Of a stretch of DNA of 44,139 nucleotides, positions 3,485-44,139 are shown piece by piece. The stretch lies in NCBI GenBank assembly GCA_002269645.1, contig NIVC01004495.1, positions 1-44,139 of the forward strand. Reading direction: 5' to 3'. Each line of letters begins with the position of its first letter. The first letter of the stretch is position 1. The DNA comes from Macrostomum lignano. Its lineage: Eukaryota. The position numbers were made by a program, and so were the translations under genes. The notes under the pieces were generated by a model that was not told the DNA's origin, did no database searches, and worked only from the letters and a program-made list of their open reading frames with translations.

Positions 3485-3520
3485 CCTCAGGGATCTGCGC
3501 TGCGGCTGGCTTGGGTGACT

Positions 3521-5634: not shown

Positions 5635-8600
5635 TCAGTATCCTGGCATGTCCAGTGGCTGCTTCCCGAGCCACATCACCCAGAGCAGCTCCACCAGCAG
5701 GACGAGCCCACCGCACACGTACAGGCCCAGGCAGATGATGTAGGCGCCTCCGACACCCTCCAGCGATATGGCCGCCGCCTGAGCAGCCGCGTTGCTGCCG
5801 CCGCAGTCGTTGCTCTGCGGGACGTACTTCCGAGTCACAACATCCACGACGCCGCTCTCCTTGCCGCGCTGAAGACTGCAGAGTTGGGAGGAGTCAGCTA
5901 CTTTAATGGTTTTGAGAATTCACAGGTTTTCGCTTTTCTGGCCTTCTTGGAGGTATCAGCCCCAATAAACCCCCGCTTTGCACTTCAGATCAAAGTTTTA
6001 ATTTCGGCGTATCATTCTCTGCAACGACACACTTCGCACAGAATGTGTACAGTTTGTTTGCATTGCATAAAAACCAGAAGGAATGCGGAATGAAGAAAAC
6101 GTACAGCAAGTCGAACGCCGGCAGGTAATAGGCATCTCTGGGAAACGTCATCGCCTGGTAGTAATAGTTAAAAAGGCTGGTGGCCTGGTACACCTGGCTG
6201 CAGAATGCGCTGGCATAGAACGAGTTGCTGCTCTTGTCCGAGATGCACACCATGTACGGGTCGGCGTCCTTAATCAGCAGCTGGAATGGTCGGCATCAAT
6301 GATATCTATAGCTAATTAGGACCCCATGCATTTTATACAACAGAACAGCCAACAAAGAACCAGGGCATCAGCTCACGGTTTCAGCGCAGGTAGTCATTGT
6401 GTCTACGACAACCATCTGCCTGCGCAGCAAAGCCATGGGTCCGTCAGTTGCCAGCATGATAGTCGCGTAGATGTTGGTGCCCCGGGCAACCATGGCCTTG
6501 TAGTGCGGCATGGAGACCAGGTCTTCCAAGCTTTGGATCGGGTACTCGGCCACCGTCACAGCCAGCTTGGCCGTGAGGTCCCCTGTCCGGTAAGAGAAAA
6601 ACAACAGTAAAATGACGCCGATAACTCACGGCTATCAAGACAAAACTTTGGGTTGTAGCCTACTAGGGGGTTATAGTCTAATGGCTAGAACATCGGACTC
6701 ACGACCGAAAGGTCAGGGGTTCGATTCTCGATCCACCCGGAACAATTTGTGTCCTTGAGCTAGACGCTTAACTCTGCAATGCTTCAGTTCACCCAGCTGT
6801 AAAATGGGTGCCAGCATTAGCTGGGGTAATTGAAAGTGTGTGGCAATCCCTCAGTCCTTGAACTGAACAGCTGTACTCAGCCTTCAGATGCGCCGCGCAA
6901 TAGCTGCGGCTGAGCTGTCGGTTGCACACCTGCCCAGGCAGGTGTAATCAATTAATATTACGTATTGAAAAGACAATGCAGACGTCAGCCTCACCTGTGT
7001 ATGCGCCATAGAGAATAACGGTGAGCATCCACCAGAAGGCCAGAACAGTGCGGGGGCTCATAGCGAAGGGATAGAAGTCCTGGCCCTGCTGCAGGAAGCT
7101 GCCAATCACTGACCAGATGTACTCCTTCAGCCACACCTCATCGGCAAACGCGTACGAGATGCGTAGATTCCACCCGGAGAACGGATTGCAGCTGGCGAGC
7201 ACAAACACGATGATGGGAACGAAGACGAGCATGCCGAGAATGAGCAGCCAGGAGTCCCAGGCCAGCGGCGTGAACACATTCCACAGCTTGGACTCTGATG
7301 GCGGCCGCTTCACCAGAATGGTGTTGGCGGAGAACATGTAGTCCTCTGAGTAGTCGATCACTTGGTAGCGAATGTTGGTGATGGCAAACGGCATGGCAAA
7401 CTCGGCTTCCTGGGAAGAAGGCAACGAGAACAGAGTTTCAGACTGTCAATTCGAGCAAACTGTACTTTATAACATAAATTATCATTAAGCAGGCGCTGTC
7501 CTCACTCCTCTCTGCAGCATGCCGATGCAACCGCTGAAGTAGGGCGATCCTTCGACCGGCGCTCCGAACTGGATATCCGGTGGGGAGAAAATGTCATACC
7601 TGCCGCAATGAAGGTCAATAAGTTTCTGTACTCTATAATGCAACGGAGAATGAGTTGAGGCTCAATGCAAATCTGATTCAGACATACGAAAAATTCAGAT
7701 GCGAGGCATAATAGTTGACCATATCCACCGAGTGGCCAGAAGCCGTGCCAAAGGTGTAGTTGCTGTACCTGGTGAAAGGCGGGAACTGGTTGGGAAAATG
7801 GGACTCGTTATTAGATAAGGTTTATTATTAAAATGTTACAACTACTTTATCACTAACATAAATAACGTCCCGAAATAATTATTTGTTACTTTTTCTTATC
7901 TGAAGAAACAAGCAATGCCCTTCATACCATTTTACGAGCGTAATCCCAATTTCTTATTATGAAGTAAAACATCAAGTCTTCAGCTATTCGTGACTAACCG
8001 GCGGCGCGCAGACCCGCAGTCGAGCTCCCTTGAAGTCCACGAAGGTGTTGGGAAACAGCAGCTCGCGCTCCTTGTACTCGAAGGTCACTACAAGGCTGCC
8101 GTTCTCGACGATAAACCGGCCGCTTGGCACGAGTTCCGCGACTGCGTCCGGGTTGCTGAGCAGGCCCAGCATCTCCAGGAAGTAGTCGCTCCGGTGCCCC
8201 GCACTTCCGTTGGCTGGGCTGAGCCGCTGCTATGAGGCATGCCAGGAAATATGGGGTTAAGCATTAATTACAAGAAGCCGTGCTTCTATTAGGGCAATTA
8301 AGCTTTGCTTTCTGTTCTCTGATTCAGCTATTAAGTATGCCGGTGTAAAGCAAACTCAACCACAAATTGCACATGTCGCTAAGAATCTGAGTCAGACAGG
8401 CAACTGAACTCCAACCTGCTTCAGCTGCGCAGCCACTGCGGGACCCGCCGACCACGGCTGCAGCGGCCGACACGACGCGTTGCTGGCGGTCAGGCCGAGG
8501 TCGGAGCTGTCCAGCAGGCTCTGTGTAGCTCTGGCGAATGACAGCACGGCCTCCAACGCCTTCAGCTCCAGCATCTGAGGGATGTTCAGGGTCTACTGCA

Positions 8601-9908
8601 GATAGATCGCCAGCGCCTAAGCTCCATCGCAGAAGAAGTTTGCAGGGAACGAGTTCCTCACCGAACGCTTGCTGAACTGGCAGTCCGGATACACGACTCC
8701 GAGATCTACAGAGCAGTCCATTTCTTTGAGAAGAACTGTCGACTCACGGATCAAGAGGATGTTCGCAGACTCATTCGCGGGGATCAGAGTCTCGATAGTT
8801 CTTGGCGAAATTCCTGTGTCAATCACAGTCCAGAAGTAGTTGATCTGCAGTGTGGCTGTGTTCCGAGCCTGGAATGACAACCAAATGATATTAAGCCCTA
8901 ATCGATTGCGCGAAAGAATTTGTACCTGAGCTCACCTGCTCGAAGACGAGTGGGATCTTGTCGGGCTCGCAGACGACCACACAGTATCGAATCTGAGCCT
9001 TGACGCTGTTTTGCAGGATTTGGGTCAAATTGGTGGCCCATTCGTCGAACTGAAACATCACGCTGGCGATTCTCTTCTCCGAGAGCAGTTGCTGAAGCTG
9101 CTCAAGCAGCAAGTGGTCTGCAATGACGAGTGTTAGCCACCATGGTTGAGGAAGGCATTGCTGTCAACTTACAGATGGAGCAGTAGTCTTGAGGAAGCCA
9201 TGCGCACCCTGTTGTCTGTCGTGAAGGACAGCGACCAGATTAGCGGAGACTCGGTCCATTGCTTCTGCGGTCGCCCTCAAGAAGTCGGTCGCCAGTGGAC
9301 TCGACACGATCGCTGAGTCTGTAAAGATATGCGATTCATTCTTGTCTGTGATGTAAGCAAGTGTGCGTCAGTAGATAGGTTGTGGTAATAAGGGTTTTAC
9401 CTGGCACACTGGGTAGCCGACAAAGGCCTCTGAGAACTGCGACTGTCGGTAATTGTAGGGAGCCAGAGATTTTGAGCACATCCGAGACGAACTGACAAGA
9501 GCCGACGACGACCAAGCCGTTGAGACCTGTCGATCGACACACTGAAGTTTCAGAAGAGATTTTCCGGGTAAGCAAGCAAGTCGTCGTTGAACCTAATCAG
9601 CTATTGATTGTCACCAAAGTACATAATTTTCTTTCTTAGAATTCTACAATAAATTTGTATCTCAAGCTGTTTTTACCTCTCTGCGCAGCCTCCACTGAGT
9701 CCGCAGTCGGCAGCAGCTCCAGCGACATCGGACTGGTCTTGAATGCCGGATACCTCCAGTTTCCGTTGACCAGCTTGTCCACCGCTGTGGTGATGATCGA
9801 ACTGTCCGCGAGACTTCCGGCTTCGCTCACAACAGCCAGGCGCACGGATGACCCGCTGCAGGCGTGCAGGGCCAGCAGGAGCAGCAGCGTTCGCAGCTCG
9901 TGCCACAT
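5635..9908 (-). CDS. IR-A: ionotropic glutamate receptor / Ionotropic Receptor-like subunit with ATD, 13 exons, ~830 aa, frame intact
   Basis: Exons traced by GT-AG with consistent phase: 9908-9677, 9541-9401, 9318-9208, 9117-8936, 8868-8662, 8574-8416, 8229-7999, 7785-7688, 7599-7506, 7409-6995, 6582-6377, 6280-6105, 5875-5635. Motifs: signal peptide, S1 PFAITNIRYQVIDYS, M1, pore SFLQQG, M3 FWWMLTVILYGAYTGDLTAKL, S2, M4 LEGVGGAYI. Confidence 0.92.
6666..6955 (+). mobile_element. tRNA-derived SINE, copy 1 (intron 10 of IR-A, antisense to host)
   Basis: tRNA-like head with A-box- and B-box-like motifs (ggttcgattc), central tgtgtccttgagc...cccagctgtaaaatgggt domain, and 3' tail gcaatagctgcggctgagctgtcggttgcac shared with the copies at 16052 and 21754. 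Confidence 0.85.
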
Positions 9909-10079
9909 GACTGACTTAAAGATCGCGTGTGTGAGAGCCGCGAGCCGCTGCCGGAGTGGGACACTGGAGCTATTTATTGAGATCTTACTGAACTGAATCC
10001 GGTTTTGGTATCAGATGTTTCCGATCGATCAGAGGCTGGTTATTCAACTGCAGTCTCATTAAGTAAAAATGGAAAGGTT
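7999..10079. repeat. ~2.08-kb block (IR-A exons 1-7, introns 1-6 and ~170 bp upstream) nearly identical to 22147-24214
   Basis: Direct comparison shows about 20 substitutions in the 1263 coding nt, with alignable introns and unrelated flanks. Confidence 0.95.
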
Positions 10080-10439
10080 ACCTTCAATCAGAATGTGATG
10101 CTGCATTGACTTGGCGATGGGGCAGCGCCCGGCTGGAATTTCAGCCAGTTTGCCACCTGAGCTGTCCAATTATCGATAATGGGCTTTGCGCTTTGCCTTT
10201 TTTTGCAATATCTGCCGATGCACTAATGAAATTAGATATCCATCGCAAAGTAATAGTTAACCTATTAATCATTGGGGAGTCAACAAAAACAGAAATAAAA
10301 TGTTTGAAAGAACTTCAAGTAGGATATGACCTTGTTGATTAACCAGTGTTAAGTACGAGCTACCAAGGGGCAAACGATTTTGAATGCAAAAAGCACCAGC
10401 TATCTAGCCTAAGATATCAGATCCTTTGTGAGCTTTGGT

Positions 10440-11000
10440 TCATATAATCTGAGCAACACAAGTCACAATTTCAGCGATTCTCGCCTTGACATCTCAGCAA
10501 TTCTCCAATGAGCCACAGCATTCAGCAATCACCCACGAGCCTTTAATCTTAAGCACTCCCCTGTAAGAGCTTTGACATCTAAGCAAACCCCCATGAATCT
10601 TTTATGGTTGACAGGGGCGATTATTTCATAATTGAACCAATAATCCTAGCCCTAACCCTGCCGAGTTTCAACAATTCCCCTGAGCCTAAGAATTTCACCA
10701 ATTTGCCCTTGAGCTTTTGAAATCTTAGCGATTCCACACATGAGCCTTAACAACTCAGCATTTCACTCCCAACCCCTATGAGCTCGGGCATGTTGGCAAT
10801 TTCATATGATTCTTTTATGGTTGAACCCTAACGTAAACCTATGACTAACCCTGCCGAGTCACAGCATTTCGGCAATTCTCACCATGAACCACAGCATTTC
10901 AACAGTTACCCAATGAACCTTGACATTTCATGAATTCCCTCTGAGTCCCCAAGAATTCAGCAATTCGACTATGAACGTTTGACACCTTAGCGATTCCCTC
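10440..11000. repeat. Degenerate ~30-bp tandem repeat region (tgagccttgacatctcagcaattcccc-like); related units recur at ~12290-12370
   Basis: Recurrent gagcc(t)t.../cagcaatt(c)cc motifs; ttttatggttga...ctaaccctgccgagt is present twice. Confidence 0.55.
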
Positions 11001-11029
11001 CATGTTCGAAATGCCGCATTCCACAATCT

Positions 11030-11625
11030 CCAGGTGGATGATACTTTTCAAGACCTGAGCAGTTGCAGTACGTTAGGCACATGGTTGATGCCTATTTGAT
11101 TTGAGCCCAGAAAGAGGATCGCATGTCCAAGCAGTTCGAAAACTTCTTCGACGGTGGGAAGACAGCAGAATTGCTTAAATACAATAGTTTGATTTCCGTA
11201 GCACGCAATCTGCACATAGTGTACGCAGTATTTTGGACTTTATTTGTCGGCCGATGGATACTGACTGCATTGATCCAGAGATTGTGAAACAATCAGCGGC
11301 TTTCCAAAGCCTAGAAATATCACGGATCTTTGAGTAATAGTTGGTCTTGTGATCCAAGTTGGAACTTTTACTCCAGAAATAGCCGGAGTAACAGGCCATC
11401 AGAGAGAATGTTTAAATGGGGCCAAGAACAGCTAGACTCCTTTGAGAAGGCCCTAAATCGCCTTGCAAACACGCCTAAACTAATCTACCATGATCAGTAC
11501 ACACAGCCTCGCACACAGATGCATCGCGTCCTAAGGGAATCGGCTTCCTGCTCAGGCAGAAGGCCGACAGAAGTTAGGGCCTGGTTCAGACAGGATCCAG
11601 ATTCCTGTCTTGCTACTGCACGATT
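11030..11625 (+). mobile_element. Decayed Ty3/Gypsy pol fragment (end of RT, connection domain, start of RNase H)
   Basis: Across stops and frameshifts: FGLYLSADGY...ISGFPKPRNITDL*VIVGLV, FKWGQEQLDSFEKALNRLANTPKLIYHD, HTDASRPKGIGFLLRQ...LVQTGSRFLS. These are typical Gypsy RT/RNase H motifs. Confidence 0.75.
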
Positions 11626-12905
11626 GTTTTCTGATCCCCTGCTTTGGACCTGCTTGAAGTGCCACCTCATCAGCACCGTCTCAATACCGACATAGAGCGG
11701 CACTGGTTCATATTGGTGTGTCGCCCTCGTGTCGTCAGCGTAAAGGCAGGTTGTAAGTCTCCGTAGAGGGGCTTGGAGGAAGTTACTCGTGACGATCGAC
11801 ACCAGGAGCTGCAAAAACAAAGTTCAATTCGTCCGCGGATTGTCCAATTCCTGAAGATCTATGCAATGGATATTGGCAGCTTTTCCCTTCCTTTTCTTTT
11901 TCTTTCTCTCTTTGTCTCTTATCTTGGGCACAATCTGCATCTTGTGAGTCCTGAATTGACAATTGTCAGGCTCGTATCAAGTTTTTTAACTCTCGCCTGC
12001 AACAGGAAGTAGGATGCAGGATCGATGTCAGGATCTACATGGCTTATAGACAAGCAACAAAATGCTAAATAGGCCCCTGGATCATCTGCGAGTTCAAAGC
12101 TGAATCTGGCGTGAAAGTTTCTGTTGATCAAAAGAATTGGCAACAAGATCTTGTTTATCTGGGTTTGACTATTCAGCCTCTCTGAATACCGCTCGGGTCA
12201 AGATTTAGTAGCCACTAGCAATTTACGCCCCCCGTTGGGGAGCAAACAAAGAATGTACTAAATTTTTTAAATAAACTACATGTAGCTTCTAACCTTAGCC
12301 TTAACATCTTAGCAATTCCCCCCAAGACTTGAGATCTCAGCAATTCCCCCAGTAAGCCATTCCCCCAGTAATCGATTTTCGAATATTTCGTCGACAAGGC
12401 AACTCGTTCGTGAGGGAGAGTGAATGTTGTGTAGCTGTTTTGCAGATATGTACATCTGCTATGTACATCTGTTTGCCGATGTTAATCTGTCGCAACTAGA
12501 TAAATATATAAGTATAAATATACCAGTCGAAAGGCCAACTTGGTTTAAGTTCGTGTGTACCCACAAAAATCAGTTTGACTATCTCAACACAACACCATGC
12601 AGTTTCCAACGGTCAGAATCTCGACACCACTGCTTCTTGTTTCGTGAAGATTTTAAATAAAAAGAAATATGAATAGGCATATTGAATAGACCAGGTGCAT
12701 AAAACAGAGTTGACATCTAAACAGATTATCTTATTTTAATTTGGGCTTGTAAATAGTTGTTATTCTGCCTAACCTGGCTTATTCTGTCTGTACAAGTATC
12801 AGAATAATGCGAGGTAGATCTTGTATAGATTAGTGCTATATATTGTAGTGCACTGGCTTTGCTAATGTTAAATAAAGCTTACTGAACACACAAATAGAAA
12901 GAAAA

Positions 12906-15485
12906 ATGCGTGACCGGAATTGGAAAAAGGGCTTCATTTTTGTTGCTTTGCTGCTCTGCTCGCTGGCAGCCGGCCAGGTCTCCCAGTGCGCTCCCGCTGA
13001 CTCTCCGCGGCTCCGCTTCGTGGCGCAGCTCAGCGTGAACGGCTGCGCGCTGTTCGTGCACGACACGGGAGCGAGCGACGGTCCGCACTTGGCAGTCGAG
13101 CCGCTCATGTGCGTGACGGACAGCCTGAGAGGCATTGCTGCTCGATTCGACTTCATCACCCAGCAGCTGTACTTCAGCGTTCCTGTATTGATGAGGGATG
13201 CTGGGATGCTCGCAGATGCTCAGCGTCAACTGCGGCATCTGTCACCGAGGTCTGTGAGCTTCGCCACGGTCACCAACATCAGCGTCTCAGCCGACTTCAG
13301 CTCATTAATCCGGGTTTCTGACATCCTGTGGACTCCAGATGAACCAATCGCCACCCTGAGACTGCAAATTGAGAAGAGGGCCCGCAGCAGTGTGTGCCAA
13401 GCTGCAAGCAACTTGAGACTGGCAAATGTGCCTCGAATGCAAAGTCTGAGTTCATTAGAAATCCAGCCAGAGCAGAATGCCAACTTTAGAAGTTCGCCCG
13501 GCGAGGCCCTTGAAAAAGTTAGGCTGTCAGCTTCTATCATTTCGAACGGCTCTTGCTATGAAGTTCAGAGACACGTCCTGCTGCAAAACAGCAGCTTCTT
13601 CGACTTGGAATTCGGCAGACAAAGATTTGCAAATGTGTCGAATTGCCGACAGCTTCGGTTCATCCGCTCCGTCAATCTCGAGAACTGCTCAGTCCGAGTG
13701 CACCAGAGACTCGACATGAAGGGCCACTTCCTCATCGAGCCTCTGCTGTGCCACAACATCTCCAGCTTGAGCAGCGAGTCAGTCAGGTATGACTATAGCC
13801 GAGACATGCACTACCTGAAGCTGGATGTGGTGCTGCAAGATGAGGCCACACGCGATGCTGTGAGGACTCAGCTGGCCGACCTGTCGCCTCGATCGGTCGA
13901 TTTTATGCGGCTGTGGACTGCTGAGAGATCGGTGAGCTCCTCGTTGAGTTCTCGGTTCGAGGTCGGTCCGCTGATGGTGTCGACAGACTGGAAGTCCGCT
14001 CAGCTGCGGCTGCTCTGCGGAAGCTCGGGGCTGTGCGACGAACTCAGGTTTGATAATTGCTTGGAGAAACAGAAACAGAATTCACTTTACCTCACGACAG
14101 TTCTTTAAAATTCTGAGTGTTTTATTTGCCCAGTTGCCCTGATGTCTCACAGACCCTAAGGACCCCGTTTCAATGGGTCTTTCCAAATTCAAAATTCATG
14201 TCAACCAGTTCATTTCATTTCAAATGAATTTTTTTTGGAATATAACAGTGAAAAGCATTCGTCTTAAGAAAACTGAAATGGTTGACCTTTTTAGTGGCCC
14301 TCAAGAATTGCTTTAATTATTGTTTTCAGAGGTTACGCGTATTTTGGTGTTGTATTGCAATCTAAAAACTCCGCTGAATTTCAGATCGGCGGTGCTGAAT
14401 GAGCCCGCGGATTTGTGGCGACACCTGAGGTGGCGGGTGACGTCTCTGGTTGCTGACCAGTGCCGATCCGAGTCGGTCCAGACAACTTTATCATGGAGAA
14501 TGAAGGCGTCGGCAAGTGCGAGCTGCTCGAGTCCGCAGTCATGCGCCGCCGCTGACTCTTCTTACGCGCTTCAAGTTCAGCGAGACGGCCGCTGCTTCGT
14601 AAAGATTCAGCAGCGACTCACCGGCAGAGTGAGTTTCCAACGAGGCTGGACTGAGTACGAGACTGGCTTCGGTGACGGCACTGACTTCTGGATCGGTGAG
14701 CGGCCGCTTCGCGTTCGCAGCTCTGCTAACAGAGATAAAGCGTCTGCTTCATAACAAAGCTGATAAATTTGGCTGCACTGGCGCCTGGCAACCTGATCCT
14801 TCTCCCTTCCTCTCTTTCCCATCCCGCCTCGTTGCAGCCAGCCGCTGAGAATGCAGCAAGGTTTACTACCCTATTCAACATGTAAATACGATCACGAACT
14901 TAAACCAACCAAGGCAATTTACATTCTCCTGTGATCCAGTGAAAGCTCCGATTCGAAGGACAGTAGCCATACAATTTATGTTCGTTTTCGTCTGTTTTAC
15001 AGGTGTGTCACTAAAATGCCTGACCAATCAGAAGTGACCCAGACTCTGCCGCTTAATTTCTTCCCACAGGCCTCTCCACCATCCACTTGCTGAGCCAGGG
15101 CGGCGTCACTTTCAGATTGGAGATGAAGCTCTGGAACGGCTCTGAGCTGCATGCGGAGTACGCGGGATTCCAGGTGGGAGATGCCAGCACTGGGTATCGG
15201 ATGACGTACCGAGAGATGCTGAAGAGCAGGTCCAGTTTGAACTATGATGAACTGCAGAAAAACTCAGGAATGCGGTTTTCCACAATAGACAGGGACAATG
15301 ACGAAAGCAACCCAGGGTCATGCACAAACAGGTATGGAAAAGGAGGCTGGTGGTTTCGAGACTGCAACCACTCCAACCCGAACGGGATTTTTCCTGTGCG
15401 GGAGACGGCAAATAACAGCTATATGACCTGGTGGTGCGAGACTTGGCTGTATCTCCGTGAAGTGCGAATGCTGCTGCAGATATGA
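12906..15485 (+). CDS. Secreted fibrinogen-related domain (FReD) protein, 3 exons, ~622 aa, with two N-terminal ~214-aa repeats of unknown family
   Basis: Exons 12906-14047, 14385-14695 and 15070-15485 join in frame at GT-AG sites (phases 2 and 1). Signal peptide FIFVALLLCSLAAG. Fibrinogen C-terminal (FBG) domain motifs IQQRLTGRVSFQRGWTEYETGFG..FWIG, FSTIDRDND and GGWWFRDCNHSNPNG. Confidence 0.9.
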
Positions 15486-16051
15486 CTACTGTCTGGTTTG
15501 AGAACTCAGCGATGCACTCCGGTTAAAAATGCACAGGACTGGTTGAAACTAACAGTCATTTTTATAGCCGAAAATGTTTATTTCAGATAAAAATATTGTT
15601 TTATTAAAAGTGACAGCATGCAGTGCAGCCTGTTTCAATCGCATGATCCAGAATGCATATCTTAGTTTTGAAGAGGCATAAGTTTAAATGAAACTCATGT
15701 GCAGATATGGTGGTGGTGATTAAATTTTAATTAAGCATTCTCTACATTACTTAAATACAATGTAGCTGAAGTTGCTCTTCACTCAGCGGCATAGCAACAG
15801 TCTCGCCAGGAGCAGGCAAGCCATGCTAAATAAAGAGAGGAGTTTCAGAAGCTCAAAATTAAACATGCTCAAAACTTCTAAATAAACTTTCTAAACTCGA
15901 AACTTCACAATGTCAGTCACTTTGACAAGCCTGAAACTTCATTTGTTTCGAACTTCATTTCACTTTTTCGAATCTTGTTAGCCACTTTTGCTGGCTCACA
16001 ACTTGAACGAATTCGAAGATGTGAAATTTCAACGTGCTCTTCATGCTGTAA

Positions 16052-16300
16052 GGGGAGTGGCCCAGTGGTCAGAGCGTCGGACTCACGACTTGAAGGTCGG
16101 GGGTTCGATTCCTGATCTCACTTGGAACAATTTGTGTTCTTGAGCAAGACACTTCACTCTGCATTGCTTCCATTTTGCCCAGCTGGGGTAATTGACAATG
16201 TGTTTGGCGATCCCCAGTCCTTGGACTGAACAGCCGTACGCAGCCTTCAGATGCGCCACGCAATAGCTGCGGCTGAGCTGTCGGTTGCACATCTGCCCAT
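16052..16300 (+). mobile_element. tRNA-derived SINE, copy 2 (intergenic)
   Basis: A box tggcccagtgg, B box ggttcgattcc, and the same body and tail as the copies at 6666 and 21754. Confidence 0.85.
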
Positions 16301-16829
16301 TACTAGAGTCGGTTACTAGAGGTTACTAGATCGGTTACTACCTAGAGTCGGTTGCACTTTGGCAATTAGTTAGTTATCATTAATTTATGCTGTACTTAAG
16401 CATAAGGGTTTTAAATCGCATCATGCGCTTTACAAAACACGAGATTGCCAAACTGTGACGAGGTCAGACACCAATGACCTGTTCAAAATCTAGTCTTAAT
16501 AGGTTTTCGCGTCATTCGAATGCGTCTGTATTTGCTTATTTTTGTGTTGCTCACCACCCTCATACACAAGTCTTCAACATTTAATGCCCAAATGCCTGAG
16601 GCCTTAGAAGTACCATAACTGAGTCAATTGCAAGCTCAACTGGTTACATATCTCCAGCACCGCCTGCTGCTTTATAAGAAGAATGTCTTCCCAGAGCCAT
16701 GCCCGACCTTCATGTTGTTTGCAATCTCTTCCTCTTAGCTCCAGCTCCAATCGATGATATTTTGATTTCTCAAAAACCACCTTCGTAGAAAAGCCAAGGC
16801 CAAGTCCACAGGTCACTGGTCTGCGACTG

Positions 16830-17159
16830 GGGACGCTTTCATAAGACCTAAATTTCACAACGCCTAAAACCACCACACTTCACAACGCCTAAATTTCAAA
16901 TCGCCTATATTTCACAACGCCTAAAATCTTTGCTTCTTTCCTTCACATTCAGTTTTAGGTGTTGTAAAATTTAGGCGATATGAAATTTAGGCGATATGAA
17001 ATTTAGGCGATGTGAAGGAGCGTGCAGAAATCCGGATTAATGAGCTGAAGTTTCGCATTTTCGATTTTAGGCGTTGTGAAATTTAGGCGTTATGAAATTT
17101 AGGTGATGTGAAGTCATGTGCTTTAGGCGTTGTGAAATTTAGGTCTTATGAAGCGCCCC
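16830..17159. mobile_element. 330-bp MITE with ~100-bp terminal inverted repeats built of 16-bp subrepeats and a 9-bp TSD (Mutator/Foldback-like)
   Basis: Left gggacgctttcataagacctaaatttcacaacgcct... mirrors right ...aggcgttgtgaaatttaggtcttatgaagcgcccc; flanked by ctgcgactg at 16821-16829 and 17160-17168. Confidence 0.85.
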
Positions 17160-17449
17160 CTGCGACTGGACTGCTCCTTCCCTATCGAGAGGAAATGACT
17201 GTAGGTATAGGGGTTATTGTTGTTGGCGGAAACCTGCTTACAGGACCTCCCGTAGCTGCCGATTCAGCACTGGTGGCCAGCCCAGCTCCCAGTGGGGCTT
17301 AACTACTTCCTGAAGCTGTTCGGCGGCTTGCTGGACGTCAGGCTGCAGTTTCTGCAGCTGCAGATCGCGCATCAGCCTGTCTGCAAATCTCTTCTGTCAG
17401 CAGACTGCTTCAAAGCAAAGAAAATTTGTATAGACAGAAAAATTCTAAC

Positions 17450-17962
17450 TCCATTGCTCATTCTGCTGTCTGTAGTCATGAACAATTCCTGTTCCATTGC
17501 TCATTCTGCTGTCTGTACTCATGAACAATTCCTGTTCCATTGCTCATTCTGCTGTCTGTACTCATGAAAATTTTAGTTCCATTGCTCATTCTGCTGTCTG
17601 TACTCATGAACAATTCCAGTTCCATTGCTCATTCTGCTGTCTGTACTCATGAACAATTCCTGTTCCATTGCTCATTCTGCTGTCTGTACTCATGAACAAT
17701 TCCTGTTCCATTGCTCATTCTGCTGTCTGTACTCATGAACAATTTTAGTTCCATTGCTCATTCTGCTGTCTGTACTCATGAACAATTCCAGTTCCATAGC
17801 TCATTCTGCTGTCTGTACTCATGAACAATTCCAGTTCCATTGCTCATTCTGCTGTGTGTACTCATGAACAATTCCAGTTCCATTGCTCATTCTGCTGTCT
17901 GTACTCATGAACAATTCCAGTTCCATTGCTCATTCTGCTGTCTGTACTCATGAACAATTCCA
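17450..17962. repeat. 43-bp minisatellite (tccattgctcattctgctgtctgtactcatgaacaattcctgt), ~12 copies
   Basis: Units start at 17451, 17494, 17537 and so on. Confidence 0.95.
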
Positions 17963-18229
17963 ACATGGATAATAAATAAAATACTCGTAGATCCGACGAT
18001 AGTAAATTAGATTTCGAAAACACAAAAGTTGCTTTCTGAACTCATTTTTCTCCATCTGATGCTTGAATCTCAGTTCAGAAGCGAAAATGCGTTGGTTTGT
18101 GACTGGTCTTGCCAAGTCACTAATTAACCATAGATAATAAAAATGTTTTTAGTATCTGTGTAATTAACCAGTTTTAAACCCCCTCCTCTGCCCTGCCCTC
18201 TTTCTAAAATGGTAACTCGAAGGAAGCAG

Positions 18230-18430
18230 CGCTGCCGCTGATGCCCATCAGTATGTTCAAGGAGCAGCTCGAGAACAGCCGGATCGCCCTCTACATTGAC
18301 AACAGAGCGGCGGTGGGCTTCATCAACAACGGTGCATCTCGTAACGCGGCCATCATTGCCCTGCTGCGAACTGCCACTCTGGCAGCACTCAAGCACAACA
18401 TCAGCTTCCGAGCCTTTCACATGCCTTGCG
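18230..18430 (+). mobile_element. DIRS/Ngaro-type retrotransposon RNase H fragment
   Basis: RIALYIDNRAAVGFINNGASRNAAIIALLRTATLAALKHNISFRAFHMP matches the DIRS1-type RNase H pattern (DN.A.V..IN.G.SR...LLR.....N..F.A.H.PG). It is truncated on both sides. Confidence 0.65.
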
Positions 18431-19529
18431 CCTGGAAGCTGCATCGGCATCTGCTACTCTTCCTGCTTCCTGATGCGGTTCTACGGGCATCCAGCCTTGG
18501 CCTGTGGAAAGCTGCGTTAGCGTTGCCTTAGTGACCACGTCGCTGATCAACTGGAAGTGCAACTGCGTGAACGGTGCTCTGTGTGGCGCGGTGATTTTCT
18601 TCTGCCTGTCACCTTTCATGTTTCATGTTTTTTCTTGTTCTTTTTGGGTTTGGGGTTGCTACCGCGCTTCCCTTCTCCAACGCTACTCGAATCTTCTTTA
18701 GGTTTAACTCCAATCAACAGCAAAATAGACGGGTCAATTTGGTTTTGCCTGATTCAGTGAGGAATAAATGAGTTTAAAGATGCCTCCAGATCAATTTGGT
18801 TCACTTGCTGCATCATGGAAGTTGCAGAAAATATTTGCAGAAATGTATATTTCTATTGTGTACTTGGATAGGATTAAGTGTTCTAATAGCTACTGAAATT
18901 TGTGTTAGGGATTGGAGAATCATAAAGTCCATAAAGTTATAGATAGGTAACAACAACCTTCTCAGGCATCGCTAGCAAGGCATGGCAACAAACCGGTGCT
19001 TCAAAAATGTTTCTCAAGTGCGATTGAAAATAAAAGTTGTTTCAGTATACTAGCGTACAATATAACTTTTCTTCACGTCCTCCATCAATTTTAGGTACTT
19101 TCGTACATAATAAAAGAAAATCCACAGTTATAAAAGTGCAACCCGGAAAAGGCTCTTAGCTCCAAGCACTATTCTCTAAATAATTTTTTTCCAGAATCTT
19201 TATCTGCATCAAATTTGGGTCTACCATGGAAAGTCTTGATTTTAAAAAAATCCGGACTAAAAATCTCCGTACAGAAAAAGTACATTGGAGAGATAGGACC
19301 TCCGATCAAACACAGGATAGCTTCATCCGATTGAATGATTAAGTTGTAGTTCTTCTGTCTCTCCAATGACATTCCAGCAGAATTAAGCCCTAAAATAAAA
19401 TTCAATAGAAGGCGAGTGATACGCCCTGAAACAACAGTAATTGGTTTGGTCCTAGCAAGAACGGCTCAAAGTTATATTTAGACTGCACTTATTCCAATAG
19501 TACATGGTTCGCCCGGCTGGCCGATGCCA

Positions 19530-22500
19530 TCAGTATCCGGGCATATCGAGCGGGTCCCTCTGCAGCCTGACCACCCAGAACAGCTCGATCAGCAGGATGA
19601 CACCGCCGCACAGGTAGAGCGACAGACTGACGATGTAGGCGCCACCCACACCCTCCAGCGGGATGGCTGCGGCCTCAGCGGCGGCCGTGTTGACGTTGCA
19701 ATCGCTTGTCGAAGGAATGAACTTGCGAGTCACCACATCGACAAAGCCGCTCTCCTTGCCGCGCTGCAGTCTGTAGGGTTCGAGTTTTTGGCGTGACTTT
19801 ACATGTTCTGGTTCAAGGTTCGGTTGTGGCACTTAGTTCTGTGGTGGTTCAAGGTTCGGGTGTGGCACTTAGTTCTGTGGTGGTTCAAGGTTCGGGTGTG
19901 GCACTTAGTTCTGTGGTGGTTCAAGGTTCGGTTGTGACACTTAGTTCTGTGGTGGTTCAAGGTTCGGGTGTGGAATATCGTTCTGTGGTTCGAGGTTCGG
20001 TTGTGGAATGTCGTTCTGTGGTTCGAAGGTTGGTTGTCGCTTGCAAGTATTTGAAGCCAAAAAATCGTAAAATTAATGCACAGCCGAGTAAGTTTTTTTC
20101 ATATGGCACTATACATGTAATAAAGCCAAGAAGCTATAACCAAAGTCTAGCGGAGATGGCTTCAATGCAATTTAACAGCTGGAGGTAGCTATATCCAAGA
20201 AAATTAAAATATATTGAAAGAGCATGAAACTTACAGAAAGTCAAATGCTGGAAGGTAGTAGACATCCTGTGGAAAAGTCATAGCCAAGTAGTAAAAGTTG
20301 AAGAAATTTTTGGCTTGGTAAACCTGCTTGCAGAATGCGCTGGCGTAATAAGAATTGCTGCTCTGGTCTGAGACGCACACCAGGTACGGGCTCGCGTCCG
20401 GCTTGAGGAGCTGAGGGTAAGTTCGGTGAAGTGCTTTTTCAGATCCTAACTGAGAGCCTCAGGCTTTGTTGATTTCATCGAGTGTAAATAAATCTAAAAC
20501 CATGTCAGTCAGACTCACAGTCTCGGCGCAGGTGGCCATTGTGTCAACAAGCTCCATCTGTTTGCGTAGCATGGTCAAGGGACCTTCCGTCGCCAGCATG
20601 ATTGAGCCGTAGATGTTGGTGCCCTGGGCAACCATGGCCTTGTAGTGCGGCCTGGCGATCAGATCCTCCAAGCTCTCGATCGGGTACTTGGCCACCGTCA
20701 CAGCGAGCTTGGCCGTGAGGTCCCCTGAAGGAAAGGGATAGAAAACGCACTAACATTTGATCAACTGCAGATTTGATAGAACAGCCTAGCTTAACCACCT
20801 GTATATGCTCCAAAAATGACTACTGTGAGCATCCACCAGAACGCCATGACAGTTCGAGGACTCATCGAGAACGGGTAAAAGTCCTGGCCCTGCTGCAAGA
20901 AGCTGCCAATGACCGACCAGACGTATTCCTTTAGCCAGACTTCGTCAGAAAACGCATAAGGCAAGCCCAAAGTCCAGGCGCTAAAGGGACTGAGCTTGGC
21001 GAAAATGAAGATAACGACTGGAACAATGACGAACATGGCAATAATGAGCAGCCAAGAGTCCCAGGAGAGCGGCGTGAACACATTCCACAGCTTGGACTCT
21101 GGTGGAGGCATTTTCACTAGGATGGTGTTAGACGAGAACTGGTACTCATCCGAGTAGTCGACTACTTTATGGCGGAAAGTAGTAGTAGCGAACAGCATCG
21201 CGAAATCCGCTTGCTGAAAGACAGAAACAGATTCAGTCACTCAGTGTGTTGAATTCATTTGGAAGTACGCTCGTATGTTCACTGCGCTCACTCTTTTCTG
21301 CAGCATGCCGATGCAGCCAGTAAAGTAGGGTGAGCCCTCCACTGGTGCCCCGAACTGGTTATCCGGCGGAGAGAACAGGTCGTACCTTCAAATTGAGGCA
21401 TAAAAAATGAAGCATATTTTCATCTAGAGATGACTGATGAAAAATAATATGGCTTACGTAAAATTGAGGTGCCTGGTAAAGTAGCTAAGCATTTCGACCG
21501 AGTGTCCAGAAGCTCTGCCAAATGTGTAGTTCTCGTAGACCGTGTAAGGTGGAAACTGGATTGGTTCGTGCAGAGTATCAGCTTAGCATGCAGAAAAGAT
21601 AATTAAATCATGCCAGTTTTGCTTCAGTATATGAATTACTGTCATTTCCAGCGTTTCACTGTTTGTGCAACTGTATGAATCGAACACTACTTCATTAATC
21701 CAAGCACAATTTAAAACAAAATTAAGCTTCATCAGACAACCTCAGCATCTTCAGGGGGGTCGTAGCCCAGTGGGAGAGCGTTTGACTCACGACTGAAAGG
21801 TCGGGAATTCGATTCTCGACCCGCTCGAAACAAGTTGTCTTTGAGCATGAACAATAAAACATAACTCTGCATTGCTTCAGTTCACAAAGATGAAAAATGG
21901 GTACCAACATTAGCTGGGATAATTCAGGGTGAGTGGCGATTGAGAGTCCTTGGACTGAACAGCCGTACGCAGCATTAAGAGGCGCCGCGCAATAGCTGCC
22001 GCTGAGCTGTCGCTTGACCATTGGGGCATGGGTAATCAATTATTATTATTTAAGATCTGCACCAAAAGAGATATTTGATTGAAAGTAAATTCGAGAAACG
22101 CTCATGAGGCAAAAGTTACATATTTCGCTGAAAAGAAAGCCCTTACCGGCGGCGCGCAGACTCGCAGTCGAGCTCCCTTGAAGTCCACGAAGGTGTTGGG
22201 AAACAGCAGCTCGCGCTCCTTGTACTCGAAGGTCACTACAAGGCTGCCGTTCTCGACAATAAACCGGCCGCTTGGCACGAGTTCCGCGACTGCCTCCGGG
22301 TTGCTAAGCAGGCCCAGCATCTCCAGGAAGTAGTCGCTCCGGTGTCCCGCACTTCCATTGGCTGGGCTGAGCCGCTGCTATGAGGCATGCCAGGAAATAT
22401 GAGGTTAAGCATTAGTTACAGCCGTGGTTCCAGTACGCTTTGCTTTCTGTTCGCTGATTCAGCTATTAAGTATGCCGGTGTAAAGCAAACTCAACCACAA

Positions 22501-24042
22501 ATCGCACATGTCGCTAAGAATCTGAGTCAGACAGGCAACTGAACTCCAACCTGCTTCAGCTGCGCAGCCACTGCGGGACCCGCCGACCACGGCTGCAGCG
22601 GCCGACACGACGCGTTGCTGGCGGTCAGGCCGAGGTCGGAGCTGTCCAGTAGGCTCTGTGTAGCACTGGCGAATGACAGCACGGCCTCCACCGCCTTCAG
22701 CTCCAGCATCTGAGGGATGTTCAGGGTCTACTGCAGATAGATCGCCAGCGCCTAAGCTCCATCGCAGAAGAAGTTTGCAGGGAACGAGTTCCTCACCGAA
22801 CGCTTGCTGAACTGGCAGTCCGGATACACGACTCCGAGATCTACAGAGCAGTCCATTTCTTTGAGAAGAACTGCCGACTCACGGATCAAGAGGATGTTCG
22901 CAGACCCATTTGCGGGGATCAGAGTCTCGATAGTTCTTGGCGAAATTCCTGTGTCAATCACGGTCCAGAAGTAGTTGATCTGCAGTGTGGCTGTGTTCCG
23001 AGCCTGGAATGACAACCAAATGATATTAAGCCGAATCGATTGTGCGAAAGAATTTTTACCTGAGCTCACCTGCTCGAAGACGAGTGGGATCTTGTCGGGC
23101 TCGCAGACGACCACACAGTATCGAATCTGAGCCTTGACGCTGTTTTGCAGGATTTGTGTCAAATTGGTGGCCGACTCGTCGATCTGAAACATCATGCTGG
23201 CGATTCTCTTCTCCGAGAGCAGTTGCTGAAGCTGCTCAAGCAGCAAGTGGTCTGCAATGACGAGTGTTGGCCACCATGGTTGAGGAAGGCATTGCTGTCA
23301 ACTTACAGATGGAGCAGTAGTCTTGAGGAAGCCATGCGCACCCTGTTGTCTGTCGTGAAGGACAGCGACCAGATTAGCGGAGACTCGGTCCATTGCTTCT
23401 GCGGTCGCCCTCAAGAAGTCGGTCGCCGGAGGACTCGACACGATCGCTGAGTCTGTAAAGACATGCGATTCATTCTTGTCTGTGATGTAAGCAAGTGTGC
23501 GTCAGTAGATAGGTTGTGGTAATAAGGGTTTTACCTGGCACACTGGGTAGCCGACAAAGGCCTCTGAGAACTGCGACTGTCGGTAATTGTAGGGAGCCAG
23601 AGATTTTGAGCACATCCGAGACGAACTGACAAGAGCCGACGACGACCAAGCCGTTGAGACCTGTCGATCGACACACTGAAATTTCAGAAGAGATTTTCCG
23701 AGTGAGCAAGCAAGTCGTCGTTGAACCTAATCAGCTATTGATTGTCACCAAAGTACATAATTTTCTTTCTTAGAATTCTACAATACATTTGTATCGCAAG
23801 CTGTTTTTACCTCTCTGCGCAGCCTCCACTGAGTCCGCAGTCGGCAGCAGCTCCAGCGACATCGGACTGGTCTTGAATGCCGGATACCTCCAGTTTCCGT
23901 TGACCAGCTTGTCCACCGCTGTGGTGATGACCGAACTGTCCGCGAGACTTCCGGCTTCGCTCACAACAGCCAGGCGCACGGATGACCCGCTGCAGGCGTG
24001 CAGGGCCAGCAGGAGCAGCAGCGTTCGCAGCTCGTGCCACAT
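19530..24042 (-). CDS. IR-B: iGluR/IR-like subunit with ATD, 13 exons, ~830 aa, frame intact
   Basis: Same exon lengths and phases as IR-A. Exon 1 24042-23811; exon 7 ends 22147; exons 8-13: 21555-21458, 21385-21292, 21213-20799, 20724-20519, 20410-20235, 19770-19530. Confidence 0.92.
19805..20030. repeat. 36-bp minisatellite in intron 12 of IR-B, ~6 copies
   Basis: Unit gttctgtggtggttcaaggttcgggtgtggcactta. Confidence 0.9.
21754..22050 (+). mobile_element. tRNA-derived SINE, copy 3 (intron 7 of IR-B, antisense to host)
   Basis: Head gggggtcgtagcccagtgggagagcgtttgactcacgactgaaaggtcgggaattcgattc; same body and tail as the other two copies. Confidence 0.8.
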
Positions 24043-24214
24043 GACTGACTTAAAGATCGCGTGTGTGAGAGCCGCGAGCCGCTGCCGGAGTGGGACACTG
24101 GAGCTATTTATTGAGATCTTGCTGAACTGGAGCCGGTTTTTTGTATCAGATGTTTCCGATCGATCAGAGGCTGGTTATTCAACTGCAGTCTCATTAAGTA
24201 AAAATGGAAAGGTT
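22147..24214. repeat. Partner of block 7999-10079 (IR-B exons 1-7 plus upstream sequence)
   Basis: Near-identity starts at the last base of exon 7 and ends at ...aaaatggaaaggtt. Confidence 0.95.
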
Positions 24215-44115: not shown

Positions 44116-44139
44116 ACTAAAGTTGAAATGTGAATGCTA

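What the first reader, a model, noticed from the sequence alone, without database searches (positions are those of the whole stretch)
7999..24214. IR-A and IR-B: near-identical ATD half, old and divergent LBD half, sharp switch at the exon 7 donor
Blocks 7999-10079 and 22147-24214 are ~98% identical in coding sequence (about 20 changes in 1263 nt, counted by eye), with alignable introns. From intron 7 onward the introns cannot be aligned, and exon 8 differs at 11 of 33 residues. A plain duplication gives uniform divergence, so this points to gene conversion or half-gene replacement that stops where the LBD begins. It resembles the domain-restricted conversion known in clustered protocadherins. 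Inference: a constant assembly module is homogenised while ligand specificity is shielded.
Basis: partly seen in the sequence, partly recalled or inferred. Interest (0 to 1): 0.8.

Follow-up and report, generated by a model that had tools for sequence, protein, structure and literature searches.

The report
Half-gene homogenisation in tandem glutamate receptors
In a tandem array of five glutamate-receptor-like genes of the flatworm Macrostomum lignano, neighbouring genes share an almost identical front half (the amino-terminal domain, introns included) but have old, very different ligand-binding and channel halves, most likely because gene conversion keeps copying the front half and stops at one intron.

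Summary
The window holds five tandem minus-strand iGluR genes (A–E) of Macrostomum lignano, each with 13 exons. A and B differ at 21 of 1263 coding sites in exons 1–7 (dS 0.035), and introns 1–6 are near-identical. In exons 8–13 dS is 0.98, and introns 7–12 are no more alike than shuffled sequence. A maximum chi-square scan puts the switch 2 nt from the exon 7/8 junction.

- **Second pair:** C and D show the same pattern at the same junction (dS 0.027 versus 0.64–0.83).
- **Gene E:** a UniProt model shows E's exons 5–7 are C/D-like, again ending at exon 7.
- **Second cluster:** another M. lignano iGluR cluster has ATDs 93–97% identical beside LBD/channel halves 52–56% identical.

Best explanation: regional interlocus gene conversion (concerted evolution) of the ATD half, bounded by the unalignable intron 7 and the highly diverged exon 8.

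The "constant assembly module, shielded specificity" reading is only partly supported. ATDs are alike only within neighbour groups (54% identity between types) and evolve faster than LBDs. Small young patches also occur in LBD-half exons 11 and 13. No positive selection is seen.

This is a known kind of process in a new family. Mis-assembly is unlikely but needs spanning reads to exclude.

The parts
5635..9908 (-). Gene A, 13 exons, 830 aa iGluR-type subunit. Exons (high-low): 9908-9677, 9541-9401, 9318-9208, 9117-8936, 8868-8662, 8574-8416, 8229-7999 | 7785-7688, 7599-7506, 7409-6995, 6582-6377, 6280-6105, 5875-5635.
   Evidence: Spliced DP alignment. Exons 7-13 match UniProt A0A1I8FU98 exactly. 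Pfam finds ANF_receptor, Lig_chan-Glu_bd and Lig_chan.
7994..10079 (-). Young block in A: 171 nt of 5' flank plus exons 1-7 and introns 1-6 (the ATD half).
   Evidence: 43 substitutions in 2067 aligned nt (2.08%) and 4 small indels against B. Both edges are sharp.
22142..24214 (-). Young block in B, the partner of 7994-10079.
19530..24042 (-). Gene B, 13 exons, 830 aa. Exons: 24042-23811, 23675-23535, 23452-23342, 23251-23070, 23003-22797, 22709-22551, 22377-22147 | 21555-21458, 21385-21292, 21213-20799, 20724-20519, 20410-20235, 19770-19530.
7786..7998 (-). Intron 7 of A (213 nt), the first old segment. It is unalignable with B intron 7 (21556-22146, 591 nt), which contains a ~300-nt dispersed repeat at 21755-22048.
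   Evidence: SW score 18 against 18.8+-2.2 for shuffles. Repeat hits.
26383..30720 (-). Gene C, 13 exons, 836 aa. Exons: 30720-30474, 29942-29802, 29714-29604, 29536-29355, 29263-29051, 28974-28813, 28731-28507 | 28435-28338, 28250-28157, 28085-27671, 27438-27233, 27124-26952, 26626-26383. The exon 6/7 junction may instead lie 9 nt earlier, as in the UniProt model of E.
36355..40063 (-). Gene D, same structure as C. Exons 1-7: 40063-39817, 39665-39525, 39437-39327, 39259-39078, 38986-38774, 38697-38536, 38454-38230. A 1-nt deletion in exon 13 (within 36536-36547) shifts the frame.
28507..29951 (-). C/D young island 2: exon 2 through exon 7 with introns 2-6. Partner in D is 38230-39674.
   Evidence: 26 substitutions in 1445 nt (1.80%) and no indels. 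Introns 2-6 give z = 53-72. The edge lies at or within 12 nt of the exon 7 donor.
30474..30733 (-). C/D young island 1: exon 1. Partner in D is 39817-40076. It has a ~21-nt divergent patch at codons 2-8.
29943..30473 (-). Intron 1 of C (531 nt). It is unrelated to intron 1 of D (39666-39816, 151 nt) apart from the last 9 nt, although it lies between two ~98.5% identical exons.
   Evidence: SW z = 1.3. Sequences.
41435..44116 (-). Gene E, exons 8-13 only; its ATD half lies beyond the window end. A 1-nt deletion in exon 10 (within 43610-43623) shifts the frame.
   Evidence: The ATD protein of E was recovered from UniProt A0A1I8HC06.
8416..8574 (-). Exon 6 of A. It is 90-92% identical in nucleotides to exon 6 of C/D (28813-28974, 38536-38697), while the other ATD exons are 57-71% identical. 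This is an older patch shared between the two ATD types and limited to the exon.
   Evidence: (D17, D19).
27284..27438 (-). First ~155 nt of C exon 11 (partner in D ~37132-37286): about 98% identical, starting exactly at the acceptor.
26477..26626 (-). First ~150 nt of C exon 13 (partner in D ~36449-36597): about 98% identical, starting exactly at the acceptor.

Best explanation
**What it is.** The window holds a tandem array of lineage-specific, full-length ionotropic glutamate receptor genes (ATD + LBD + channel) from Macrostomum lignano. A/B and C/D are old sister pairs. Both halves give the same tree, ((A,B),(C,D)), with E outside in the LBD half.

**How it works.** Non-reciprocal copying between neighbours (interlocus gene conversion, or concerted evolution) has kept or made the 5' half nearly identical. 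That half runs from the 5' UTR/promoter edge to the last base of exon 7, introns included. The 3' half has diverged to synonymous saturation. The exchange is homology-dependent. It runs through the contiguous homologous block and stops where homology ends: at the unalignable intron 7, which is followed by the short and most diverged exon 8.

**Why the edges are at splice junctions.** Other, smaller young patches also begin or end exactly at exon-intron junctions next to unrelated introns. These are exon 1 of C/D, exon 6 between ATD types, and the 5' parts of exons 11 and 13 of C/D. This suggests that introns act as heterology barriers.

**Timing.** Several separate islands in C/D have the same ~1.4-2% divergence. 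I therefore favour repeated or ongoing conversion of homology islands over one single event.

**Shown:** the mosaic, its significance, the positions of the edges, and its recurrence.

**Inferred:**
- the conversion mechanism itself;
- the role of heterology as the stop;
- whether selection against homogenising the LBD, or a 5'-biased start of conversion, first let the 3' half escape.
For: - **Divergence step (A/B):** dS 0.035 against 0.98. **C/D:** 0.027 against 0.64-0.83.
- **Introns share the age of the exons around them:** A/B introns 1-6 and C/D introns 2-6 give z > 40; all others give z <= 2.1.
- **Breakpoints:** 2 nt and 10 nt from the exon 7/8 junction, with 0 of 2000 permutations reaching the observed chi-square.
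- **Same tree in both halves**, so depth differs but not relationship.
- **Exon-limited patches:** exon 6 is 90-92% identical between types, against 57-71% for other ATD exons. C/D exons 11 and 13 have 5' parts about 98% identical. C/D intron 1 is unrelated although it sits between near-identical exons.
- **Third case:** E exons 5, 6 and 7 are 86%, 94% and 93-95% identical to C/D in protein, while exon 8 is 45% and exons 1, 3 and 4 are 35-44%.
- **Second gene cluster:** ATDs 93-97% identical against LBD/TMD 52-56%.
- **Independent gene models** join the AB-type exon 7 to LBD_A (P0001) and to LBD_B (P0003).
- **Possible reticulation:** P0003 has the LBD of B but carries A's residues at positions 298 and 306.
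- **Literature:** diverged introns impede conversion, and compact introns can be carried along (PMC3966223).
Against: - GC3 is not higher in the homogenised half (0.70-0.73 against 0.69-0.78). Long-running conversion often raises GC3, as it does in fugu protocadherins.
- There is no gradient of identity toward the block edges, which a slowly eroding island might show.
- If conversion requires homology, it is unexplained how intron 7 became wholly heterologous right up to the donor in three separate comparisons.
- The block divergence (1.8-2.1%) equals the reported divergence between the subgenomes of this neopolyploid (2.2% genome-wide). That leaves room for an assembly or homeolog-related confound.
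- No sister-species or read data could be reached.
Confidence: 0.75

Rival explanations
1. Assembly artefact. In this neopolyploid genome (three subgenomes about 2% apart), the contig could be a mosaic in which a homeologous or paralogous ATD segment was wrongly placed in front of another gene's LBD half.
For: The ATD blocks differ by 1.8-2.1%. That is the same order as subgenome SNP divergence (2.2% genome-wide, 1.1% in CDS). The genome paper warns that collapsed or mosaic sequences are common in such assemblies (PMC10733133). D and E carry 1-nt indels that may be sequencing errors.
Against: - Every block edge is a transition from shared sequence into unique sequence. An assembler misjoins inside shared repeats, not at their borders.
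- The same mosaic appears four times in one contig and in a second gene cluster.
- UniProt models contain both the ATD-LBD_A and ATD-LBD_B junctions. P0003 is a non-identical copy of the B junction.
- Differences between the copies are spread evenly along the blocks.
Confidence: 0.08
2. Unequal crossing-over (NAHR) within or near intron 7 between misaligned paralogs created hybrid genes. This would be half-gene replacement by crossover rather than by conversion.
For: The genes lie in tandem in the same orientation with the same exon structure. A hybrid gene would combine one gene's ATD half with another gene's LBD half and show a single switch point.
Against: - A crossover product should share the whole upstream intergenic region with its ATD donor. 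It should also have an LBD twin elsewhere in the array.
- Identity stops 171 nt (A/B) or about 13 nt (C/D) upstream of the ATG.
- No LBD half in the window is closer than 85% in protein to any other.
- C/D intron 1 is unrelated inside the shared region.
- Both halves give the same tree.
Confidence: 0.07
3. RNA- or cDNA-templated conversion. Transcripts of one paralog served as the repair template, which would explain why the edges sit at splice junctions and at the transcript's 5' end.
For: At least eight edges of young segments coincide with exon-intron junctions:
- the exon 7 donor in A/B and in C/D;
- both sides of C/D intron 1;
- both sides of exon 6 between ATD types;
- the acceptors of C/D exons 11 and 13.

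The C/D 5' edge follows an AG in both copies.
Against: - Introns 1-6 (A/B) and 2-6 (C/D) are co-homogenised at the same ~2-3% divergence as synonymous sites. The template would therefore have to be largely unspliced yet end exactly at the exon 7 donor.
- No introns have been lost.
- Heterology-limited DNA conversion explains the same edges more simply.
Confidence: 0.04
4. There was no exchange. The ATD half is simply under very strong constraint, or the LBD half evolves very fast after an ordinary recent duplication.
For: Exon 8 has the highest non-synonymous divergence in both pairs (pN 0.18-0.19).
Against: - Synonymous sites and introns show the same step as the coding sequence.
- Between the two types the ATD is the less constrained half (dN 0.40 against 0.25).
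- Omega in the LBD half is 0.05-0.47, which indicates purifying selection.
Confidence: 0.01

Closest known systems
Regional gene conversion in clustered protocadherins (teleost and human Pcdh variable exons; PMC1852091; Noonan et al. 2004 as cited there)
   Same: Tandem paralogs of a neuronal surface receptor family. One defined part of the coding region is >98-99% identical at the nucleotide level, including synonymous sites, while the rest is old and diverse. Homogenisation occurs within sub-clusters of neighbours.
   Different: In protocadherins the tract lies inside one large variable exon, in its 3' part (EC4-6, TM). GC3 is raised in the converted part. Here the tract is the 5' half, spans seven exons with their introns, ends at a splice donor, and shows no rise in GC3. 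There are no shared constant exons here.
Human fetal globin genes HBG1/HBG2 (5' ~1.5 kb homogenised, sharp boundary in IVS2; Slightom et al. 1980, recalled from memory and not checked here)
   Same: Two tandem duplicates whose 5' flank, exons and an intron are near-identical, while the 3' part is much more diverged. The boundary is sharp and located in or at an intron.
   Different: The globin boundary sits at a simple-sequence repeat inside the intron, and the 3' halves are only moderately diverged. Here the boundary is at the first bases of the intron. The 3' halves are at synonymous saturation and encode different functional domains.
Interlocus conversion including compact introns in Caenorhabditis paralogs (col-12/col-13, act, hsp70, fog-2/ftr-1; review PMC3966223)
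   Same: Adjacent paralogs with short introns. Conversion tracts can include the introns, the flanks are fully diverged, and diverged introns or 'terminator mutations' limit the tracts.
   Different: Those cases mostly homogenise whole ORFs. Here the tract is restricted to one structural domain, and this recurs in several gene groups.
AMPA/kainate/delta-type ionotropic glutamate receptors (GluA4, GluA2, GluK1, GluD2 structures)
   Same: Collinear alignment over ATD, S1, M1-M3, S2 and M4 (E = 4e-40). An ATD-only profile hits only iGluR ATDs. Pfam finds ANF_receptor, Lig_chan-Glu_bd and Lig_chan. The ligand-contact Arg and a QQG pore motif are present.
   Different: The M3 gating motif is YTGDLTAKL rather than SYTANLAAF. 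The S1 Thr that contacts the ligand is Ala. The ATD has no detectable relatives outside M. lignano in 1.84 billion representative proteins.

Membership tests
Ionotropic glutamate receptor superfamily (ATD-LBD-TMD subunit) | Ligand-gated channel domain with M1, pore loop, M3 and M4 (Pfam Lig_chan PF00060) | tested here: met
   A: E = 1.8e-21, 76.9 bits. C: 2.9e-22. Both are above the 30.8-bit cut-off. Collinear with GluA4 and GluA2.
Ionotropic glutamate receptor superfamily (ATD-LBD-TMD subunit) | S1 ligand-binding lobe (Pfam Lig_chan-Glu_bd PF10613) with the conserved ligand-contact Arg | tested here: met
   A: 48.1 bits. C: 60.7 bits. The cut-off is 30. The Arg aligned to the GluA TxxR position is present in A-E.
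Ionotropic glutamate receptor superfamily (ATD-LBD-TMD subunit) | Amino-terminal domain of the LIVBP/ANF_receptor type | tested here: met
   - C: ANF_receptor at 28.9 bits, above the 25.4 cut-off. A: 20.4 bits, below it.
- The ATD-only profile hits only iGluR ATD structures, weakly (best E = 0.0065).
- The full-length alignment is in register with GluA4 from residue 140 and with GluK1 from residue 60.
- The AF2 single-sequence model was too poor to use (pLDDT 41.6).
Ionotropic glutamate receptor superfamily (ATD-LBD-TMD subunit) | SYTANLAAF gating motif in M3 | tested here: not met
   The sequence is (A/S/T)YTGDLTAKLAV in all five genes. This is a divergent member, as many invertebrate iGluRs and IRs are.
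   All four complete genes have a ~420-aa ATD. Arg is kept, the S1 Thr is replaced by Ala, and an acidic residue lies at or next to the S2 position.
   No tree with reference IRs and iGluRs was built. The best PDB matches are AMPA-type receptors.
Interlocus gene conversion / concerted evolution of tandem paralogs | Regionally discordant divergence that includes synonymous sites and introns, with a statistically supported breakpoint | tested here: met
   (chi2 276 and 163; 0 of 2000 permutations).
Interlocus gene conversion / concerted evolution of tandem paralogs | Within a species, paralogs are more alike than orthologs between species in the converted region only | not testable with these tools
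   No Macrostomum DNA other than the window could be retrieved.
Interlocus gene conversion / concerted evolution of tandem paralogs | GC3 enrichment of the converted region (a frequent, not obligatory, signature) | tested here: not met
   GC3 is 0.70-0.73 in the ATD half and 0.69-0.78 in the LBD half.
Interlocus gene conversion / concerted evolution of tandem paralogs | Phylogenetic incompatibility or reticulation among copies | tested here: inconclusive
   P0003 groups with B in the LBD (63 of 63 residues) but carries A's states at residues 298 and 306. Window B carries the C/D/E states there. This rests on two sites only.

The most novel reading that the evidence does not exclude
The ATD/LBD boundary may be a maintained evolutionary module boundary. 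Under this reading, selection keeps the assembly domain identical among neighbouring subunits so that they co-assemble, while keeping their ligand-binding and channel halves distinct. That would be a protocadherin-like combinatorial design realised in an ion-channel family. The exon 7 donor would then be a hard stop used repeatedly, seen in A/B, C/D, E and a second cluster. A more exotic variant holds that the splice-junction-precise edges reflect transcript-templated repair.
Probability: 0.15. Interest if true: 0.8.

Novelty: new member of a known kind. Interest (0 to 1): 0.5.

Why it matters
In iGluRs the ATD governs which subunits pair, while the LBD and channel determine what the receptor senses and conducts. 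A gene array in which neighbours are forced to share the pairing domain but stay different in the sensing half would be a natural experiment in modular receptor evolution. It would also offer a simple genetic route to families of co-assembling subunits with different specificities.

There are practical consequences:
- Trees, orthology calls and dating for this flatworm receptor expansion will be wrong unless the ATD and LBD halves are analysed separately.
- Short-read mapping and gene models in these clusters will be error-prone. The UniProt models for this locus are truncated, fused or misextended.

The process itself, regional gene conversion, is well known. The finding is a clear and recurrent new example, not a new mechanism.

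Tried and rejected
- **First Pfam scan of the N half.** A crude ORF concatenation gave no ATD hit. With correct splice models, ANF_receptor is found.
- **Word-indexed homolog searches.** The full-length search returned only P0001, and the ATD search returned nothing.
- **Genomic context lookups.** No other Macrostomum DNA could be obtained.
- **Structure prediction.** The single-sequence AlphaFold model of the ATD had pLDDT 41.6, so I did not run a fold search on it.
- **tblastn HSP chaining for gene models.** It read through the short introns. I replaced it with my own spliced dynamic-programming aligner.
- **Global intron alignments with cheap gaps.** They gave misleading 'aligned identity'. 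I replaced them with local alignment scored against shuffles.
- **Test for biased gene conversion via GC3.** No signal.
- **Search for TE ends, target-site duplications or simple repeats at the block edges.** None seen.
- **Polarising A/B and C/D differences with the other type as outgroup.** Changes fall on both lineages (A/B 5 against 8; C/D 3 against 10, with more derived changes in D). No donor direction can be read from this.
- **Literature.** Searches found no prior report of this in Macrostomum or in iGluRs/IRs.

Full report
**What is in the window.**

Self-comparison shows five tandem copies of one gene on the minus strand. They are A (5635-9908), B (19530-24042), C (26383-30720), D (36355-40063) and E (41435-44116). 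E's 5' half lies beyond the window end.

A protein search identified the organism as Macrostomum lignano. UniProt A0A1I8FU98 (P0001) is a truncated and misextended model of gene A that matches exons 7-13 exactly.

I built gene models with my own spliced aligner, checked against hand-read splice sites. All genes have 13 exons of the same or nearly the same lengths. All end in a conserved ...PLD(M/F)PG(Y/F) stop.

**What the genes encode.**

Pfam on the corrected proteins gives three domains:
- ANF_receptor. In C it covers residues 142-351 at 28.9 bits, above the curated cut-off. In A it scores 20.4 bits, below it.
- Lig_chan-Glu_bd, starting at residues 419-434.
- Lig_chan, residues 536-800.

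Full-length A aligns collinearly with GluA4 (query 140-814, E = 4e-40) and with GluK1 from residue 60. A profile of the N-terminal halves alone hits only iGluR ATD structures, weakly (best E = 0.0065).

The 'ATD half / LBD half' labels are therefore right. Exon 7 ends at residue 421, where the S1 lobe begins.

These are full-length, divergent iGluR-type subunits, not typical ATD-less IRs. The M3 motif is YTGDLTAKL, and the ligand-contact Arg is kept.

The ATD has detectable relatives only in M. lignano itself. An exhaustive search of 1.84 billion representatives gave 17 hits, and the ten looked up (with their cluster members) are all M. lignano UniProt entries.

**Checking the observation.**

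| Measure (A vs B) | Exons 1-7 | Exons 8-13 |
|---|---|---|
| Differences | 21 of 1263 nt | 291 of 1230 nt |
| dS | 0.035 | 0.97-0.98 |
| dN | 0.011 | 0.16 |
| Protein identity | 98% | 72% |

Sources.

- Introns 1-6 are near-identical (local alignment z = 43-132 against shuffles). Introns 7-12 are indistinguishable from shuffled sequence.
- Exon 8 differs at 11 of 33 residues.
- The whole block 7994-10079 / 22142-24214 has 43 substitutions in 2067 aligned nt (2.08%) and four small indels.
- A maximum chi-square scan places the breakpoint at CDS position 1265, with the exon junction at 1263 (chi2 276; 0 of 2000 permutations reach it).
- At base level, identity runs to ...GCCGCCG|GT and vanishes after the donor consensus. 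The 5' edge, 171 nt upstream of the ATG, is equally abrupt.

**The pattern is recurrent.**

C and D show the same mosaic.
- Exons 1-7 differ at 17 of 1239 nt (dS 0.027). Exons 8-12 have dS 0.83, or 0.64 when exon 13 is included.
- The breakpoint lies within 10-12 nt of the same exon 7 donor.

Gene E gives a third case. Its ATD protein was recovered from the fused UniProt model A0A1I8HC06.
- Exons 1, 3 and 4 are of a third, old type, 35-44% identical to both other types.
- Exons 5, 6 and 7 are 86%, 94% and 93-95% identical to C/D.
- Exon 8 falls to 45%.

A second M. lignano iGluR cluster, known only from UniProt models, has the same property.
- P0026 is a fused model of two neighbouring genes. 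Their first 105 mature ATD residues are 101/105 identical, while their LBD/channel halves are 52% identical.
- P0020 shares 93-97% ATD identity with both, but is 56% identical in S1 to the LBD of one of them.

**Finer mosaic.**

- C/D intron 1 (531 against 151 nt) is unrelated except for the last 9 nt. Yet it lies between exons that are ~98.5% identical.
- Exon 6 is 90-92% identical between the AB and CD types, while the other ATD exons are 57-71%. The flanking introns are not alignable.
- In C/D, the first ~155 nt of exon 11 and the first ~150 nt of exon 13 are about 98% identical. Both patches start exactly at the acceptor.
- At least eight edges of young segments therefore coincide with exon-intron junctions.
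- The separate C/D islands have similar divergence: 3 substitutions in 216 nt, and 26 in 1445 nt.

**Interpretation.**

Both halves give the same relationships, (A,B) and (C,D). Only the depth differs. The pairs are therefore old tandem duplicates whose 5' halves share recent ancestry. Selection on the protein cannot explain this, because introns and synonymous sites show the same step.

The simplest process is homology-dependent, non-reciprocal copying between neighbours. It covers a contiguous homologous block and stops at heterology. This fits the exon-limited patches next to unrelated introns. It also fits the published view that diverged introns impede conversion while compact introns inside a homologous block are carried along (PMC3966223).

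Intron 7, followed by the short and most diverged exon 8, splits each gene into two homology domains. Exon 8 is 65-72% identical in nucleotides and has the highest pN. A tract crossing intron 7 would have to resolve in the LBD exons.

Two things could have let the 3' half escape in the first place. One is selection against homogenising the LBD. The other is a 5'-biased start of conversion. Either could also have kept intron 7 heterologous. I cannot distinguish between them.

Equal ages of several separate islands favour repeated or ongoing conversion over one event. P0003 adds a hint of reticulation: it has B's LBD but A's residues at positions 298 and 306. Both lines of evidence are weak.

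**What does not fit, or limits the claim.**

- GC3 is not raised in the homogenised half, unlike in fugu protocadherins.
- There is no identity gradient toward the edges.
- The ATD is not a family-wide constant module. The two types are 54% identical with dN 0.40, more diverged than the LBD/TMD halves (63-66% identical, dN about 0.25).
- The LBD half is under purifying selection (omega 0.05-0.47 per exon) with no sign of diversifying selection.
- D and E each have a 1-nt frameshift, which could be real or an assembly error. D also carries more derived ATD changes than C, 10 against 3.

**Assembly artefact.**

The block divergence of ~2% equals the reported divergence among the three subgenomes of this neopolyploid. 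The genome paper warns of collapsed or mosaic sequences (PMC10733133).

Four points argue against an artefact:
- All block edges are transitions into unique sequence, which is not where assemblers misjoin.
- The mosaic recurs four times in this contig and again in another cluster.
- Separate UniProt models contain both the ATD-LBD_A and ATD-LBD_B junctions, one of them as a non-identical copy.
- Differences are spread evenly along the blocks.

I rate mis-assembly at about 8%. Only spanning reads can exclude it.

**Other rivals.**

- **Unequal crossover.** It predicts shared upstream flanks and LBD twins. Neither is present.
- **RNA-templated conversion.** It would explain the junction-precise edges. 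It is contradicted by the co-homogenised introns.

**Comparison and novelty.**

Regional homogenisation of part of tandem paralogs is well known. Examples are the protocadherins (PMC1852091), Caenorhabditis paralogs (PMC3966223) and the fetal globin genes (from memory).

Three things are new here:
- the family (iGluRs);
- the coincidence of the stop with the ATD/LBD boundary at one splice donor;
- its repetition in at least three comparisons plus a second cluster.

I found no prior report. I file it as a new member of a known kind, of moderate interest.

Noticed in passing
window 12906-15485 (+): An unrelated gene lies between A and B on the opposite strand. It consists of a 400-aa ORF with a signal peptide and no Pfam hit (12906-14108), followed by ORFs with the Fibrinogen_C domain (14320-14754 and 15087-15485; E = 7e-8 and 2e-20). 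It is probably one fibrinogen-related protein gene with introns.
   Followed up: partly
window 32032-33085 (-): Overlapping ORFs between C and D carry a Phage_integrase (tyrosine recombinase) domain (E = 1.7e-7) and a weak DUF3504 match. This is probably a fragment of a Crypton/DIRS-like mobile element.
   Followed up: partly
window 2756-3484 (+), and 2951-4902 (-): A plus-strand ORF has a Claudin_2/PMP-22 domain (E = 9e-9). The last ~290 residues of UniProt A0A1I8FU98 (P0001) are built from antisense and downstream pieces of this region. They are a mis-annotation: gene A really ends at the stop codon at 5635-5637 (...PLDMPGY*).
   Followed up: partly
window 36536-36547 (gene D exon 13) and 43610-43623 (gene E exon 10): Each gene has a single-base deletion relative to its paralogs (CATCCC-CAGAC in D; GCCT-GGAC in E), which shifts the frame. 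These are either young pseudogenes or long-read indel errors. D also carries more derived ATD changes than C (10 against 3).
   Followed up: partly
window 6666-6960, 16057-16299, 21755-22048: A dispersed repeat of ~230-300 nt (72-79% identity) sits in A intron 10, in the A-B intergenic region, and in B intron 7. This accounts for much of the length difference of those introns.
   Followed up: no
window 3521-3992, 17450-17962, 19809-20022, 24896-25500, 33525-33920, 34814-35452, 36178-36311: There are seven minisatellite arrays with periods of 22, 43, 36, 14, 30, 40 and 27 nt, most at 96-100% unit identity. They lie in the intergenic spacers of the array. The 14-nt array at 24896-25500 has 43 perfect copies.
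   Followed up: no
window 30690-30720 vs 40033-40063: Codons 2-8 of C and D differ almost completely (MTAWHASF against MPDTKASD), inside an otherwise ~98.5% identical exon 1. The identical 13 nt AGCCAGTGAGATG lies just upstream. C's version resembles A and B (MWHE...), so D's start appears to have been replaced.
   Followed up: no
UniProt models P0002, P0026, P0004, P0006 (outside the window): Published M. lignano gene models for these receptor clusters are often fused (two neighbouring genes, or a gene plus an RNase H element), truncated, or contain retained introns. Near-identical ATD exons probably mislead gene prediction and read mapping.
   Followed up: partly
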